A stretch of 48,676 bases of DNA from positions 1 to 48,676 of the forward strand of contig RBZT01000842.1 in NCBI GenBank assembly GCA_003693705.1. The letters are read 5' to 3'. Below are positions 4,237 through 9,859 of the stretch, piece after piece. The notes under the pieces were generated by a model, which worked only from the letters and a program-made list of their open reading frames with translations, searched no databases and was not told the origin of the DNA. The stretch comes from Polymyxa betae A26-41 (Eukaryota; Protista; Endomyxa: Phytomyxea). Both the position numbers and the translations under genes were made by a program. Positions within the stretch are counted from its first letter, which is position 1, and each line of letters opens with the position of its first letter.

Positions 4237-5195
4237 TTATCTTAATGTTGGATTTAATAAATTAGCAAGGTCATTTGAAATCAAAGCCAAGTCAGCACCA
4301 CTATCGAGTACTGCGTCGCATGTTATGTTACTGCAGTCCAAAGTAACTTTAGCTATCGTTTGGCAATCAGCGTTAGCAATGCGAGCGATGATATAGTGAT
4401 AAGATTTAGGAGGTTTATAAGTGCCCTTATTAATTAAATGCTGAATACAGAGCTTCTTTTGCTATTCTGGGGATGGTTTTTCAGGACCGTTGTAATATGA
4501 TGCCCTTTCTTCTGGCACTGAAAGCAAATCATGTCGCTTTCTGACTTTGAATCCAGTTTCGGCTTCTTCGATTTTGTATTGCCTGCATTGCCCGAAAAAG
4601 ATCGTTTTGAAGAAAAAGATCGGAAACGGGAAGAATTCGGAACATCATAATGAAATATGGGCGTGTAATTTTCGACCTTTTCATAAAGAAGTGCAGATAA
4701 TTTAGTAGGATCACGTTTAATAGCCGGATTCCATTGAATGGCATTCATAACATCATTTTTAAATTTCCAAGGTAAAAGAGCATCAACAATAGCGCGAACA
4801 TAATGTTTACGACCCTGTTCGCTCTCAAAAATAGACCCCCAATGGTTGTCATGAATAAGTATTTCACTGTTGATTAAATTCAAAATTCGGTCACGACGCG
4901 GTAACGTAAGGTCTATTTTTAAGCTTTTAGACACCGTCTCACCTATCGTATGAAGGGAATCCTTATCAGCTATGAGATAATCCTCAAAAGCTTCCAAAAG
5001 TAATTCATCAGTAAGATCATCAAGAATCACACCTGCAAGTTTCGTGTTAAGCACTGGGGGCGATCATCATTCTCATGGGCTGAATGGACAGTATGCAGCC
5101 GATACTTTACAAGACGCCTTTGTAATAAAGATAATCGTGCTTAAACGAAACGATCTCCTTTTTTCCAAGTATCTCCAACTTAATATTGATTTTGA
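4237..5195 (-). pseudogene. Gypsy gag and N-terminal half of the aspartic protease
   Basis: ORF 4434-5054 has CFQCQKKGH; hand translation of ~4240-4400 gives IIARIAN...DAVLDSGADLALIS; the upstream EIVSFKHDYLYY segment matches the gag N-region of gypsy element 2. Confidence 0.8.
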
Positions 5196-5315
5196 ATCTG
5201 CCGGGAGACGTCTGGCGGAAAGTGCGACGCACTTTTCGTTTGAACCCTCTCTTCCCCTCTCTCGTTTTCCTATAGATGAACAATAAACACTATAACTCTA
5301 TAAGGGAAAAGGGAT

Positions 5316-8300
5316 TATTGAGCTCTCTGACGTCGAGTTCGAGGCTGTGCTTGAGCAGAGGAGTCCTGTTCTGGACTCTGGCGTCGCTGCCGTCGTGCTC
5401 GCTCGCTTTGAGGCGTAAGCGATCGGCGACGACCTCTTTCTACCGCGTTGGTGAGGGTCTCTCTTTGGACGGACCCTCTAAACTAAACGGTCAGCAGTGT
5501 GCATTAAATCCGTGCAGGATCGTGTCCAAAGTCCTGCAGTTTGAAACGCAAGCAGTCACGCCGCAAATGATACATCGTGCGGTGGTCTGAGTGTTGCATA
5601 TAGGGCACCAGCGCCGGGTTCCGACATGCAGGATTTCATGGTAGACGTCCGTGCAAAGATGAGTCGCCCGTCCCACTGGTCCATTCAGCCAAGCAAAAAC
5701 GTTTCTTCCAGGAGGAGCTTGCGCTACGTTGCCATCGGCAGCGTTCACGCGTTCAGATGCAGAAGCACCTGTTCCCAGCTCAGCAACGTCCTGCATAGAG
5801 TAGATAAATGCCGGCGAAGGAGTCCAAGTTTCAGTGAACTTCTGAGGAAATCAGAGAAAGAAGATATGCGGTTCAGGCGCTGTTTCAACTGCTTGTATGT
5901 CGAGAAGTGAGCGAGCTCACTTTCAACTTGAAAAAGCCGGTTTATCATATGCGCGTTCATCAAAAAAACCATGATGAACCGGATATAGATGAACGCCCGA
6001 TGGGTCAATGACCGGAAGTCAATTTTGACATTTGCCAAATTTTAGAAACAATATTCTGGCCACCTTTGAAATGATTCCAGTGATCCACAGCAAATGGCAC
6101 GAAATCATGAGCTGGAGGCAACGGATTGCCCGTACGCTGTCGCCAGGATTCAAAAGCTTGCAGCAATTTGCTCCAGATTTTATCAGTGTGCAAATCCACA
6201 GCATCCCCAAATTCAGTAGGCCGAAGATCAACTAGATTAGGAGATTCCAAATCTGTAAAGTACTGCGAGTGCTCAGCACATTTGGTCTAGAGCATTGACG
6301 AAAACAACGCTCGACAATCTCGAGATACCTGGATCAGAAGTGAATATATCATGCTGCTGGTGTTCGCTACAACGAAGAGGCAATGATCAACGGAAGTGAC
6401 AGAACAATGATGCAGAACCTGGGATCTGTAGGCAGGAGTCCAGACCAATTTTCGAAACAAAGGATGATCGAATGATGTGACAAAAAGACGCTGTCCCAAA
6501 GTCGAGGTCAGAATAGAAGCTTCGTCTAAACGCCTGTGGGCATCTTCAGCAGATTGATGTGCTGTCATAGTTTTCAGCTCCAGAATACATACGAGCGCTT
6601 CTGATCCATCCGAACTTGAAAGATTCAAAACCATTACCCCGTCTATAGATGTTGCCATCAGATGGTCGTTAGTACCGTCCACTGACTTCTTTCGCAGCAA
6701 TCCCCGCTCTACAATATCACCCATAATGCGAAATCATTGGCCATGATCATCAAAGAATGCCGGCAGCGCGCGACGAATGTTCGATTCATTGACGCTTCAT
6801 AACTTCATATAAGAATTGGTGAAAGGCTTCATAAACCACTTCTCCATCAAACTGGCAGTCAAACGAACGTTACTACGAGGTAAGGTTTCGGTGGGCTCGA
6901 GCAGTCGCTCGATCAGATCCTTCTTGATTCCCCGAGAATTCCGATTCCTAGAGTTGCACAGTATCCGTAACTCTGACACCGTTTTGTGGTTTAAATCGTC
7001 TCGATTAAATGCAGGGAGATTTCTCCGTCCTGTGATTCCAATGATAGATAACAACTCCGGCTCGACGGGGGTATCGAACCGCTCAAAAACAGTTAGAAAG
7101 AACAGCGTGAGCAAATGTTGAGGTGATGGACCCGATCCGCAAAAAATGAAATTCAGCTCCGCCTTGGCTGCGTGTTAGACAATCAATGCATTGGTCAACC
7201 GTGGTTAGAATCATTGGATGGCCTGGTTCAGATACCGTGAATGTGCCAGCACGTTTCGGTCTGTGGACCCAGATGGCAGTCCTTGGTGCGGTTGAAAAAA
7301 GCATTGCGACTCTTCCTCGTCTACCAAATGTAGGCGATACCATACACCCATTTGTCAGCAAACTTCTTTCGAGCAACATATATGCTTTTAGCACCTTTGT
7401 CCATCACCAGACGACAGTTGCTGTGAGCTATACCACCGAAGGCAAAAGGCGCAGATTCGATGCGTTTAAATGTGTCAATTATGTGAAACCTTCGCGCACA
7501 GAACTACTCAATCAGTCCAGGAAGTAGGTAACCTCAATCAATATCAATCTTTTCATTAAGCCCTTGAACTTGTTCAGGAAGGCCAGCAGATTGCATCCAC
7601 ATCATGATAACCTTGACAATATCAGAATAACTTTCCTCTTTGCCCAGAAGTCTCATTCCAAGAACCGCAGAGGATACAACGGATACAGCATTACTGGAAA
7701 CATCGCCGAAAGCTTTCTTAGGGTTGTTAACCCTTGTGAAACCCATATCCTCCGACAGAGCAGAAGTCAGACGATACTGGTCGTCATCCAGAGCTATAGA
7801 CATTTCGCCACGAATATAAGCCAGTCTACATGAAGCAACGGTTACCGCCTGCTCCGTTGCCTGAACTCCTAAGTCAACCGCAAATGGACAATCCCACGAA
7901 CTGCCATTATCCGAATCTCTGCGAGCGTTCAAGCGCCTAATAATCTTCTGAAAAAAGTCTTTGTCAAATGAAGAAGCAATGGGGTACAGAGAACTTTTAG
8001 CATGATCAAACAAACGTGCTGGCGTTGGTTCGGTATATCGAGAGATACCTGTTAACCTAAAAATATGCTGCCAAATCGGTTCCTGCTCCAGGAAAGCTCT
8101 CTAAAAAGCCTCAGGTCTATTTTGGGTTTAGTGTTTAGGGTTGGCAACGTTACCTGATGGCAGCCCTTCTCGAACAGCACTAAGCAGGTTACCAGCAAGC
8201 GCAGATAGAAAATAGTTTACGATATCATAACATATAACCTCGGCGTTTCTGGACTTATTCAGAATCTGCCTCACATTGCGGCAGACGGCTGGAATTTCAC

Positions 8301-8471
8301 GAACAGCGTCTTCATAAAGCATCCCTCCTGCGATGTCGTTACAACTGAAAATTCGCCCATTTGAGCAGCTGCAACATAACTCCACTGAAAAGGATTATCC
8401 TCAGTATCGTCTTCCGAGATATCGGACGCTGAATAATCGTACGTATCGAAGAACTCCTCCAGAGACGCCAT
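5316..8471 (-). pseudogene. piggyBac-like DDD transposase with embedded SAP and YqaJ-like nuclease domains and a C-terminal Cys-rich domain
   Basis: Motifs in piggyBac order: SIALDDD (7780-7800), NNPKKAFG, IDID*GY (~7528-7548), HIIDTFKR, VAMLFST, then SAP (6896-6997), YqaJ-like GLL...ATSIDG...LELKT...YRSQ (6287-6724), WNHFKGGQN (~6053-6080), FLMNAHM and RWCPIC...CIICGVTAC (5491-5640). Broken by stops and frameshifts. Confidence 0.75.
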
Positions 8472-8482
8472 TGAATCAGTAA

Positions 8483-8992
8483 TAGGGCTCCGACCGGGTA
8501 CTAACGGGTCGGGTACCTGCCTCTATCCGGTACCCGTGACCCGTCCATACAAAATATTAAAAAAGGTTGCAAACAAACAAAAAATGATGGGACTTTTTTA
8601 TCTTTTTCAGATAGCACTTACCAAACATCAAAGAAGAGAAGGATTCTAGTTTCAAAGAATGTTGCCCAAGCCCAATCACGTCACGGCCGCAATTGAATTT
8701 TCGCTCGACAGCGAATGAAGAGCCCGGAATCAAATTAATCGACCAAATGTCTTTTGCCACAGCGCTGAGATTAGGAAACAGTTGAGCGTGTGCTTTTCAG
8801 TAGCCTAACGGATCAACTGCAGGATCCTCACATCGTAAATCGGTGTACTTATCCACGCACAGAAACAAAGTCCGTGCCTATCAAACTACCCGACGGGTAT
8901 TAGGGTCGGGTACCACCCCCTATCCGGTACCCGACCCGACCAGTACCCGACCCGGTTTTTCCGGGTACTACCCGTACCCGGTCGGAGCCCTA
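8483..8992 (-). mobile_element. Non-autonomous hAT element (510 bp)
   Basis: Perfect 19-bp TIR TAGGGCTCCGACCGGGTAC; 8-bp TSD ATCAGTAA (8475-8482 and 8993-9000); GGGTAC/GTACCC subterminal repeats; internal hAT dimerisation-domain remnant AKDIWS...IPGSSFAVERKFNCGRDVIG (8557-8775, minus). Confidence 0.95.
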
Positions 8993-9859
8993 ATCAGTAA
9001 GGAAGCGCTGTCAGCGACGACTAGGCCCAGAACGGGAATTTCGTGCAAACGTTTTTTGCGGGCTAGGGTTTAGGTCATTCCGAATATGACTGCAAAATTT
9101 CAGCGATTCTAGATTAATTGTTGAATTTATAGAATTGGTCAGAATTGGCCATTTTCCTGCTTTTAAATTAAAGTGTACAATAAACACATACGTGAAGTCT
9201 TCAAACTGTCCGTGAGTCGCCGATAGTTTTAGAAAATTAGCAGCGAAATTTTGCGCGAATTTGCGGGCTTTGGAAAGGTTGGTCGAACAGGTTTGGGGCC
9301 TGATCGGCGAAACAGTTTGGGGGCTGGAACTATACGAAAAACCAGCTGAGATGCATGCTTTCGATTCAAATGTTGAATCGGATTCGTATTTGGAGCTGTC
9401 TTATGATAGCGATGGACTTGAATCGGATCCTGAACCTCAGCCGGCAGGATTGCCGGCACCACCGAATCAGGATATCAAACCCGCTGCTGCCCGACAGGTC
9501 GTGGAAGCAGTTGAACTCAGCTCGCTGATGTCTATCCATGCAAGATATTTCAGTGAGTACAGTAAGGGCCGTTGAAACGTCACCCATCTAATTCCAAATA
9601 AGATCTGGCCATCGGTAATTGAGATTATTTTCCTATCTGAATAAAATGCTAACTAAACTTGGAGATTTACTCTGAGTATAAGAAATGTTTTCCCGAATGC
9701 TGTATTACCGAGAAGCAGTTGAAGGCTCATATCAGAGTCACCAAAAAGGAATTGAAAACTGGTCTCTCTGATGGAGACAGCGGAAATGTCGCTCTTCAAC
9801 CGGGCGAGTTCCTTGAGAAAATCATAAAACCAATGCCCACGCCAGTCGTAACGTATTAC

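What the first reader, a model, noticed from the sequence alone, without database searches (positions are those of the whole stretch)
5316..8471. piggyBac-like transposase with a SAP domain and a YqaJ-type nuclease built into its catalytic core
Seen: on the minus strand the piggyBac landmarks occur in canonical order: D1 SIALDDD (cf. SIDE), NNPKKAFG (cf. PxKPxKxG), D2 IDID*GY (cf. DNxF/Y), IIDTFKR (cf. GTvR), VAMLFST (cf. VxmLST), D3 WNHFKGGQN (cf. YNxxMGGVD; the Asn is one G>A change from Asp), MNAHM and a C-terminal CxxC...CxxC...C domain. Canonical piggyBac has only a few tens of residues between LST and YNxxxGGVD; here there are ~400 codons holding a SAP motif (LNHKTVSELRILC...RGIKKDLIERL) and a lambda-exonuclease/YqaJ-like PD-(D/E)XK motif set (M..(G)..NE, GLL, ATSIDG, LELK, Y.SQ, CLFVV). 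From 7114 to 6005 the SAP, nuclease and D3 segments share one frame broken only by three point stops, with no TIR or TSD around the insert, which favours one fused ~1050-aa protein over a nested insertion. Known: YqaJ-type nucleases occur as separate accessory ORFs in ISL2EU and some Kolobok elements. Inference: a two-nuclease transposase in which a second active site could process ends, flanks or the donor gap. It may belong to an already named divergent piggyBac offshoot; I cannot check that.
Basis: partly seen in the sequence, partly recalled or inferred. Interest (0 to 1): 0.85.

Follow-up and report, generated by a model that had tools for sequence, protein, structure and literature searches.

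The report
piggyBac transposase with embedded exonuclease
The window holds a dead copy of a piggyBac-type jumping gene whose cutting enzyme carries a second nuclease (lambda-exonuclease-like) and a SAP DNA-binding motif inside its catalytic core. This layout is conserved in many unannotated eukaryotic proteins, and I found no paper describing it.

Summary
On the minus strand, 8471-5400 is a decayed gene with 6 frame changes and at least 12 in-frame stops. It is collinear with residues 36-1049 of an intact 1074-aa homologue, P0003.

The AlphaFold model of P0003 (pLDDT 83.5) matches piggyBac transposase on both sides of a roughly 340-residue insert (Z 24.7). The insert itself matches lambda exonuclease (Z 15). 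A family profile hits piggyBat at E 1.7e-11 in three stretches, and the third catalytic Asp aligns after the insert.

Both catalytic sets are invariant across about 40 homologues at roughly 20% identity. These are the transposase DDD triad and the nuclease D, ExK, Q and W/R residues.

Relatives in the same genome carry piggyBac hallmarks. A 3693-bp copy is bounded by TTAA|CCC...GGG|TTAA, and about 970-bp deletion derivatives have 4-bp target duplications. The window copy has lost its left end. Its right terminus is degenerate, and a hAT-like MITE is nested in it.

The family is large, with 1607 representatives, including Plasmodiophora and Chromosphaera. None is annotated as a transposase.

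The scan found this family before on other pieces of this genome. What the exonuclease does is inferred only.

The parts
5295..8482 (-). Body of the decayed piggyBac-like element: 3' non-coding part, coding remnant (8471-5400) and the first 11 bases of the 5' leader. The left (3') end is truncated at 5295, so about 242 bp including the terminal inverted repeat are missing.
   Evidence: The DNA match to C403:359-3480 and to the deletion derivatives starts at 5295. tblastn of P0003 covers residues 36-1049.
7290..8471 (-). N-terminal half of the piggyBac core: the helical DNA-binding/dimerisation part, D1 (7777-7800), D2 (7528-7548, with a stop next to it), GT.KR (7462-7482) and the beta-stranded insertion domain (VAMLFST, 7290-7310).
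6140..7166 (-). Lambda-exonuclease/YqaJ-like PD-(D/E)XK domain. It holds the N-terminal W/R motif (7116-7166), G..NE (6779-6796), GL (6695-6706), S.D (6638-6655), ExK (6569-6583) and Q..HH (6407-6430). The lower boundary is approximate, taken from P0003 residue 799.
6902..6994 (-). SAP motif, nested inside the nuclease domain.
   Evidence: Pfam PF02037, 30.9 bits, E 2e-7. The family profile hits the Ku70 C-terminal SAP at E 8.9e-10.
5946..6079 (-). Return to the piggyBac core: the WN..KGG.D motif (D3, here mutated to N at 6053-6055) and the following helices.
   Evidence: Profile positions 776-835 align to piggyBat residues 404-463. The codon was checked.
5400..5607 (-). C-terminal Cys-rich domain (CxxC...C...C..H, 5548-5607) and basic tail.
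   Evidence: Profile positions 931-973 align to piggyBat 537-575. The C/H columns are conserved in 38-39 of 39 sequences.
8483..8992 (.). Foreign 510-bp hAT-like MITE nested in the 5' leader. It has a 19-bp TIR and an 8-bp target duplication, ATCAGTAA, at 8475-8482 and 8993-9000. It is not part of the element.
   Evidence: The empty site is seen in the C403 copy.
9001..9191 (-). Rest of the 5' leader and subterminal region of the element. The final 8 bases of the terminal repeat (GATCAGGG) cannot be recognised.

Best explanation
**What it is.** Window 5295-9191 is a dead, 3'-truncated copy of a piggyBac-superfamily DNA transposon, interrupted by a MITE.

**The protein.** The single transposase of about 1000-1070 aa has this order:
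1. piggyBac N-terminal helical domain;
2. RNase H-fold core with D1 and D2;
3. beta-stranded insertion domain;
4. a lambda-exonuclease/YqaJ-type nuclease domain with a SAP motif nested in it;
5. the core helices carrying D3;
6. more helical domain;
7. a Cys-rich C-terminal domain.

**Shown.**
- Both folds are present.
- The two-nuclease layout lies in one ORF.
- Both catalytic sets are invariant across distant homologues.
- Relatives in the same genome have TTAA or TTAA-like 4-bp duplications, CCC...GGG termini and non-autonomous derivatives.

**Inferred, about 40% likely.** The DDD core performs piggyBac-type excision and integration. The embedded 5'-3' exonuclease, held on duplex DNA by SAP, resects the 5'-phosphorylated ends left at the donor break or on the excised element. 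That would steer repair to homologous recombination, restoring the element at the donor site and giving a net gain of copies.
For: - **Structure.** The AF2 model of the intact homologue P0003 has pLDDT 83.5 and pTM 0.76.
  - Foldseek's top hits are piggyBac 6x67_C (E 1.3e-7) and piggyBat, then Tn5, then lambda exonuclease (E 5.9e-4).
  - VIA gives 6x67_C Z 24.7, rmsd 3.5 A, 375 aligned, model 90-926 against chain 117-520.
  - VIA gives lambda exonuclease Z 15.0-15.4, rmsd 3.2 A, model 455/460-799.
- **Sequence profile.** The family profile hits piggyBat at E 1.7e-11 in three stretches, with about 430 profile positions where piggyBat has about 29 residues. It also hits piggyBac (E 2e-4), LHK-Exo (E 7e-4) and R354 (E 4e-3).
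- **Pfam.** DDE_Tnp_1_7 scores 40.7 bits in P0106 and 28.3 bits in P0090, against a cut-off of 22.4.
- **Conservation.**
  - Transposase: D1 35/35, D2 40/40, D3 41/41.
  - Nuclease: D 40/40, E 40/40, K 40/40, Q 41/41, R 40/40, W 40/41.
- **One ORF.**
  - P0003 and P0047 are uninterrupted ORFs.
  - The C607 copy is one frame over P0003 residues 36-1035, with 3 stops and no frameshift.
- **Element ends.**
  - C607:3119-6811 is bounded by TTAA|CCCTGATC...GATCAGGG|TTAA.
  - Five deletion derivatives of about 970 bp carry the same TIR and 4-bp duplications.
- **Position in the fold.** In piggyBac the insertion domain and the helix before D447 contact the flanking TTAA and the target DNA (PMC7351741). 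A module inserted between them should therefore lie near flanking or target DNA.
Against: - No biochemical or expression data were obtained, and no RNA run holds the stretch.
- The model is of a homologue about 50% identical to the window copy, not of the broken window copy itself.
- I could not read model coordinates, so the distance between the two active sites and the orientation of the module are unknown.
- Pfam YqaJ never clearly passes its cut-off (best E 5.4e-4).
- The Pfam match of P0106 runs to profile position 344 before the insert. Taken alone, that would place D3 upstream.
  - The printed piggyBat alignment places D3 after the insert.
  - So does the structural range to residue 926.
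  - So does the invariance of D833.
- Lambda exonuclease works as a trimer and piggyBac as a dimer or tetramer, so how an embedded copy would assemble is unclear.
Confidence: 0.9

Rival explanations
1. The SAP-nuclease block is a separate mobile element or gene nested by chance in a piggyBac gene, so the two-nuclease protein does not exist.
For: The window copy is riddled with stops and frame changes. A foreign MITE is nested nearby, so nesting does happen in this region.
Against: - The block lies at the same place in every aligned row that spans that region, at about 20% identity.
- It lies within uninterrupted ORFs.
- In C607 it lies in one frame.
- No TIR or target duplication bounds it.
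- The model packs it confidently, with pTM 0.76.
Confidence: 0.02
2. The protein is real, but the embedded nuclease is a structural or DNA-end-binding module. It might recognise 5'-phosphate ends, nicks or forks to choose targets or to assemble the complex, and it does not resect DNA.
For: The W/R motif is conserved. In lambda exonuclease this motif is the 5'-phosphate pocket (my own knowledge; the alignment here is weak, E 0.5-1.4). SAP is a DNA-binding motif.
Against: The metal-binding D and ExK residues and the Q are invariant in 40-41 sequences. That is not expected for a purely structural role.
Confidence: 0.15
3. The nuclease takes part in the transposition chemistry itself. It might open or trim the hairpin or the 4-nt 5' overhangs, or process the second strand. 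This would alter the seamless TTAA excision typical of piggyBac.
For: - The module is inserted right before the helix that contacts the TTAA hairpin in piggyBac.
- The target duplications of the deletion derivatives are TTAA-like but not strictly TTAA: ATTA, CTAA, CTAT and TTAT.
- The piggyBac YN motif is WN here.
Against: The DDD core is complete and invariant, and in piggyBac it suffices for all steps. One copy does show a perfect TTAA duplication.
Confidence: 0.2
4. The family members are domesticated host genes rather than transposons.
For: NCBI annotates the Plasmodiophora member as an ordinary SAP-domain protein. No canonical ends were found around P0047 and P0021.
Against: - In this genome there are many decayed copies.
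- TIRs with target duplications and non-autonomous derivatives are present.
- Most public members sit on element-sized contigs of 3.7-6 kb.
Confidence: 0.05

Closest known systems
Canonical piggyBac transposases (Trichoplusia ni piggyBac, PDB 6x67/6x68; Myotis piggyBat, PDB 9c0f; Pfam DDE_Tnp_1_7)
   Same: - Same helical DNA-binding/dimerisation domain, RNase H-fold DDD core and beta-stranded insertion domain.
- Same motif set (S.DD, D.GY, GT.R, .N..KGG.D), the first and fourth nearly as in piggyBac, the second as DN.Y and the third identical.
- C-terminal Cys-rich domain.
- CCC...GGG termini and a 4-bp TTAA(-like) duplication.
   Different: - About 340-430 extra residues (a lambda-exonuclease-like domain with a nested SAP) lie between the insertion domain and the helix carrying D3. 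piggyBat has about 29 residues there.
- The motif is WN instead of YN.
- The target duplications of the derivatives are not strictly TTAA.
- Most members fall below Pfam's piggyBac threshold.
KolobokE and ISL2EU DNA transposons
   Same: These are cut-and-paste DDE transposons that also carry a lambda-exonuclease/YqaJ-type PD-(D/E)XK nuclease (PMC9587614; PMC4122938 and PMC4482050).
   Different: - In those elements the nuclease is a separate ORF (ISL2EU) or lies downstream of the transposase domain (KolobokE).
- Their transposases belong to other superfamilies.
- Here the nuclease is inside the catalytic core of a piggyBac-type enzyme.
Lambda exonuclease, LHK-Exo, RecE, mimivirus R354 (YqaJ / PD-(D/E)XK exonucleases)
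   Same: Same fold (Z 15.4-12.4). Same motif set: W..R, G..E, D, ExK and Q.
   Different: - Those are free-standing proteins that form rings or dimers.
- Here the domain is embedded in another enzyme.
- It carries a SAP insert after its first helix.
Other DDE transposases with enlarged insertion domains (Tn5 beta domain; hAT helical domain; P element GTP-binding domain)
   Same: The extra material lies at the same topological place, after the fifth strand and before the last catalytic residue (PMC7351741; the hAT and P element cases are from my own knowledge).
   Different: None of those insertions is a second nuclease with a complete active site of its own.

Membership tests
piggyBac superfamily | piggyBac-type fold: helical DDBD plus RNase H-like core plus beta insertion domain | tested here: met
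   - Z 24.7, rmsd 3.5 A, 375 residues aligned to 6x67_C.
- Foldseek E 1.3e-7.
- The nearest ESM Atlas models are piggyBac-derived clusters.
- Tested on the homologue P0003, which aligns with the window copy over residues 36-1049.
piggyBac superfamily | Sequence membership (Pfam DDE_Tnp_1_7 or a significant profile match to solved piggyBac proteins) | tested here: met
   - Family profile against piggyBat: E 1.7e-11. Against piggyBac: E 2e-4.
- P0106 scores 40.7 bits and P0090 28.3 bits, over the 22.4 cut-off.
- Most members, and the window pieces themselves, are below the cut-off.
piggyBac superfamily | DDD catalytic triad | tested here: met
   Family: 35/35, 40/40 and 41/41. In the window copy itself D3 is Asn and a stop follows D2, so this copy is inactive.
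piggyBac superfamily | C-terminal Cys-rich domain of piggyBac type | tested here: inconclusive
   - The stretch aligned to piggyBat 537-575 has an independent E of only 0.51.
- zf-Tnp_2 gives E 0.015-0.017 in 3 members, while other members hit B-box models.
- The Cys/His columns are conserved in 38-39 of 39 sequences.
piggyBac superfamily | TTAA target duplication and 5'-CCC...GGG-3' termini | tested here: met
   - C607 copy: TTAA|CCCTGATC...GATCAGGG|TTAA.
- Five derivatives carry the same TIR and duplications ATTA, CTAA/ATAA, CTAA, CTAT and TTAT.
- The window copy lacks both termini.
YqaJ / lambda exonuclease (PD-(D/E)XK) | Fold | tested here: met
   Z 15.0-15.4, rmsd 3.2-3.4 A, 204-206 of about 226 residues of lambda exonuclease. 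LHK-Exo gives Z 14.0.
YqaJ / lambda exonuclease (PD-(D/E)XK) | Catalytic D ... ExK, plus the Q and the N-terminal W/R motif | tested here: met
   Invariant or nearly invariant in 40-41 sequences. All are intact in the window copy (6638-6655, 6569-6583, 6407-6430 and 7116-7166).
YqaJ / lambda exonuclease (PD-(D/E)XK) | Pfam PF09588 above its cut-off | tested here: inconclusive
   7 of 44 members match, with a best E of 5.4e-4. The window piece gives E 0.12 and 13.1 bits, against a cut-off of 22.
YqaJ / lambda exonuclease (PD-(D/E)XK) | 5'-3' exonuclease activity on DNA | not testable with these tools
   This needs biochemistry.
SAP domain (PF02037) | Pfam match above its cut-off | tested here: met
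   The window piece scores 30.9 bits against 23.9, E 2e-7. 20 of 44 members match.
ISL2EU / Kolobok nuclease-bearing transposons | PHIS- or Kolobok-type transposase, with the nuclease as a separate ORF or a downstream domain | tested here: not met
   The transposase is of piggyBac type and the nuclease is internal to the core.

The most novel reading that the evidence does not exclude
This is an old, widespread lineage of piggyBac transposons that depends on a second, built-in 5'-3' exonuclease. Excision would be mechanically coupled to end resection and homology-directed repair. The element would therefore behave as a copy-and-paste transposon and give up the seamless TTAA religation that defines canonical piggyBac.
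Probability: 0.3. Interest if true: 0.85.

Novelty: new variant of a known kind. Interest (0 to 1): 0.74.

Why it matters
- **A new layout.** piggyBac is a workhorse of genome engineering and its structure is known. A natural lineage with a complete second nuclease and a SAP motif grown into the insertion-domain site shows that this site can host a whole enzyme.
- **A testable question.** What do the YqaJ-type nucleases of DNA transposons such as ISL2EU and Kolobok do? That has stayed open (PMC4482050 says the function of these extra ORFs is unknown). Here both activities sit in one polypeptide with separable active sites, so the question can be tested directly.
- **A possible tool.** If resection is coupled to excision, the enzyme could be a starting point for transposases that promote templated repair.
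- **An annotation gap.** The 1607 representative proteins found include at least 30 full-length ones, and those looked up are currently labelled hypothetical, SAP-domain or B-box proteins.

Tried and rejected
- **Searches that gave no piggyBac hit.**
  - hmmsearch of PDB sequences with the two narrow alignments A3 and A2, built only from close copies, gave SAP hits only. The broader 44-sequence profile was needed.
  - phmmer of P0106 against PDB found nothing.
  - Pfam DDE_Tnp_1_7 searched in six frames over the whole genome found nothing, and its controls did not ring either, so this is not informative.
- **Word-index protein search.**
  - With the C-terminal ORF it found only 2 relatives.
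  - With the N-terminal region of P0003 it found only itself.
  - The exhaustive representative search was needed.
- **Element ends in other organisms.**
  - Searching the window for the terminal repeat gave only chance-level matches, 6 against 3.6 expected.
  - No clear TIR pair was found around the ORF of the ENA contig L025, nor TTAA-flanked ends around P0047 and P0021.
  - P0047 does show CCCC...GGGG-type ends with shared subterminal palindromes, but an imperfect duplication.
- **Sequencing runs.** No RNA holder was found and organism names are coded, so the host and expression remain unknown.
- **Readings rejected.**
  - Nested insertion of a foreign element.
  - Assembly artefact: exact pieces recur in two studies.
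  - Tn5/IS4 rather than piggyBac: Z 15.7 against 24.7.
Full report
**1. The observation**

| Landmark | Window coordinates |
|---|---|
| Start MASLEEFF | 8448-8471 |
| D1 SIALDDDQ | 7777-7800 |
| NNPKKAFG | 7705-7728 |
| D2 IDID*GY | 7528-7548 |
| IIDTFKR | 7462-7482 |
| VAMLFST | 7290-7310 |
| SAP | 6902-6994 |
| Nuclease motifs | 6779-6368 |
| WNHFKGGQN | 6053-6079 |
| LMNAHM | 5946-5963 |
| CxxC domain | 5548-5607 |

- The segment 7093-6020 is one frame with three stops: 6797-6799, 6734-6736 and 6287-6289.
- The Asn in the D3 motif is AAT, against GAT in the 92.5%-identical copy on contig C403. The stop beside D2 is CGA>TGA.
- tblastn with the intact 1074-aa homologue P0003 covers its residues 36-1049 over 8465-5400 in five pieces.
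- The motif frames show six frame changes, and I count at least twelve in-frame stops. The copy is a pseudogene.
- Exact pieces of it occur in contigs of two independent studies, so it is not an assembly artefact.

**2. One protein, not a nested insertion**

- The genome (27 Mb in 1001 contigs) holds many related pieces: 24 matches to the nuclease piece and 40 to the N-terminal piece.
- Paralogues only 37-40% identical keep the pre-SAP strands, SAP, nuclease, D3 motif and Cys-rich tail in one open frame. Examples are L005:607-2700 (698 aa) and L010:1189-2784 (532 aa).
- The copy on contig C607 aligns to P0003 residues 36-1035 in a single frame, with three stops and no frameshift.
- In other assemblies the whole protein is an uninterrupted ORF: P0003 at 1074 aa and P0047 at 1155 aa.
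- An exhaustive profile search of 1.84 billion representative proteins found 1607 matches at E<=1e-3, 683 at 1e-10 and 177 at 1e-30. At least 30 of those listed are 950-1450 aa long with the matched block in their C-terminal 600 residues.
- Named sources are Plasmodiophora brassicae ('SAP domain-containing protein') and Chromosphaera perkinsii. The rest come from metagenomes and run assemblies and are labelled hypothetical or B-box proteins.

**3. What the parts are**

Pfam on single pieces gives only SAP above threshold (E 2e-7). YqaJ and DDE_Tnp_1_7 appear as weak hints.

Across 44 aligned members (A4):
- two pass the DDE_Tnp_1_7 cut-off: P0106 at 40.7 bits and P0090 at 28.3 bits;
- seven hit YqaJ, with a best E of 5.4e-4.

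The A4 profile against PDB sequences gives the following.

| PDB protein | E-value | Note |
|---|---|---|
| piggyBat | 1.7e-11 | three stretches, listed below |
| piggyBac | 2e-4 | D3 region |
| LHK-Exo | 7e-4 | |
| mimivirus R354 | 4e-3 | |
| Several SAP proteins | up to 6.5e-8 (Ku70 C-terminal SAP) | |

The three piggyBat stretches are:
- profile 75-346 to residues 102-375, covering D1, D2 and GT.R;
- profile 776-835 to residues 404-463, where WN.KGG.D aligns with YNKHMKGVD, which is D3;
- profile 931-973 to residues 537-575, the Cys-rich domain.

So about 430 profile positions stand where piggyBat has about 29 residues.

AlphaFold2 on P0003 with A4 gave pLDDT 83.5 and pTM 0.76.
- Foldseek ranks piggyBac first (6x67_C, E 1.3e-7), followed by piggyBat, Tn5 and lambda exonuclease.
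- VIA-align gives 6x67_C Z 24.7, rmsd 3.5 A, 375 residues, model 90-926 against chain 117-520.
- VIA-align gives lambda exonuclease Z 15.0-15.4, rmsd 3.2 A, 204-206 of about 226 residues, model 455/460-799.
- Tn5 scores Z 15.7, well below piggyBac.
- The ESM Atlas agrees by features, with 28 of 30 nearest clusters being DDE_Tnp_1_7. It also agrees by shape.

**4. A correction to the anatomy**

The lambda-exonuclease alignment starts at model residue 455-467. That is the conserved QGG.EW..LR.G.ITS motif, which lies before SAP (window 7116-7166).

This is the N-terminal W/R motif of YqaJ-type nucleases. SAP (model about 519-553) is therefore nested inside the nuclease domain rather than preceding it.

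The order in P0003 is:
1. core strands and D1 (258);
2. D2 (341);
3. insertion-domain strands (392-434);
4. nuclease with SAP (about 458-799);
5. a strand, then the helix with WN..KGG and D3 (833);
6. helical domain;
7. Cys-rich domain (978-1013).

In piggyBac the insertion domain is residues 372-433. Y439 and N440 touch the TTAA hairpin, and D447 sits on the next helix (PMC7351741). The module is inserted exactly at that joint.

**5. Both active sites are kept**

Counts are from A4, at about 20% identity to P0003.

| Site | Conserved |
|---|---|
| D1 | 35/35 |
| D2 | 40/40 |
| D3 | 41/41 |
| Nuclease D | 40/40 |
| Nuclease E | 40/40 |
| Nuclease K | 40/40 |
| Nuclease Q | 41/41 |
| Nuclease R | 40/40 |
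| Nuclease W | 40/41 |
| Nuclease G..NE | 39/40 each |

A separate alignment of the nuclease domain alone gives the same invariant set.

**6. It is a transposon with piggyBac ends**

- DNA comparison shows the window copy matches C403:359-3480 from 5295 to 8477. It resumes at 8992 after a foreign repeat.
- Seven deletion derivatives of about 970 bp share the two ends of the element.
- Five are complete. They start CCCTGATCCGCA and end CGGATCAGGG, with 4-bp duplications ATTA, CTAA/ATAA, CTAA, CTAT and TTAT.
- The near-intact C607 copy (C607:3119-6811, 3693 bp) is bounded by TTAA|CCCTGATC...GATCAGGG|TTAA. It has subterminal palindromes.
- C403 and C823 carry the same left terminus. So does the P0003 element in another assembly.
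- The window copy lacks the left 242 bp. At its right end the last 8 bases cannot be recognised.

That holds for this decayed copy only.

**7. How it probably works**

- **Shown:** two complete, conserved nuclease sites in one transposase of a mobile piggyBac-type element.
- **Inferred from the known piggyBac pathway:** the DDD core excises through hairpins and leaves 4-nt 5' overhangs.
- **Inferred from the lambda-exonuclease family:** the module digests the 5'-phosphorylated strand of a duplex end.

My preferred reading, at about 40%, is resection of the donor break or of the element ends. This would favour homologous repair and so restore the donor copy.

The alternatives are direct processing of hairpins or overhangs (about 20%) and end or nick recognition without resection (about 15%). 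The remainder is unknown.

**8. Comparison and novelty**

- The element meets the piggyBac tests on fold, profile, triad and ends. The Cys-rich domain is only weakly matched.
- Among known transposons with lambda-exonuclease/YqaJ nucleases:
  - ISL2EU encodes the nuclease as a separate ORF (PMC4122938 and PMC4482050);
  - KolobokE encodes it downstream of the transposase domain (PMC9587614).
- Seven full-text searches found no description of a piggyBac with such a domain. Repbase could not be checked.
- The scan has noted the same family on four other pieces of this genome, and one follow-up reached the same reading.
- I rate it a new variant of a known kind.

Noticed in passing
window 8483-8992: A 510-bp hAT-like MITE with a 19-bp TIR (TAGGGCTCCGACCGGGTAC) and an 8-bp duplication, ATCAGTAA, at 8475-8482 and 8993-9000. 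It is inserted 11 bp upstream of the transposase start codon. The C403 copy shows the empty site, and many copies exist in the genome (about 76-91% identical).
   Followed up: partly
L035:764-1733 and six further loci (L036-L041): The roughly 970-bp non-autonomous derivatives of the element contain internal telomere-like stretches (GGGTTTAGGGTTTAGG) that the autonomous copies lack at that place.
   Followed up: no
L043:1639-1657, 1830-1848, 5226-5244, 5280-5298; L047:2833-2856, 2887-2910, 6238-6257; L035 ends: Each subfamily has its own subterminal palindrome with an AT-rich centre, repeated near both ends. Examples are ACCCGTTA..TAACGGGT, AGAGGGAATATTATTCCCTCT and GTGCATATTATGCAC. The outermost 8 bases, CCCTGATC, are shared. 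These are possibly binding sites of the Cys-rich domain that co-evolve with it.
   Followed up: no
L047:2680-2830: The right end of a second, related element (ending CGATCAGGG, followed by TTAA) lies about 100 bp from the left end of the element that encodes P0003. The family's ends therefore cluster there.
   Followed up: no
window 4901-5288: Left of the truncation point, two unrelated repeats abut the element. 4901-5182 matches contig C755 at 89%, and 5184-5288 matches C637 and C441 at 87-92%. The truncation probably came from a later insertion or rearrangement.
   Followed up: no
L048:2640-2740 and 6600-6710: A distant family member (P0047, about 20% identical) has CCCC...GGGG-type ends and shared palindromes (CCGGTCCGAAAGATTCGGACCGG). 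Its duplication is imperfect (ATAT/ATAG). It sits between a LepA-like gene and another ORF.
   Followed up: partly
P0071, P0157 and other members: Some members are annotated as 'B-box zinc finger', and three of 44 hit the B-box models instead of the piggyBac zinc finger. The C-terminal Cys-rich domain may have diverged or been exchanged within the family.
   Followed up: no
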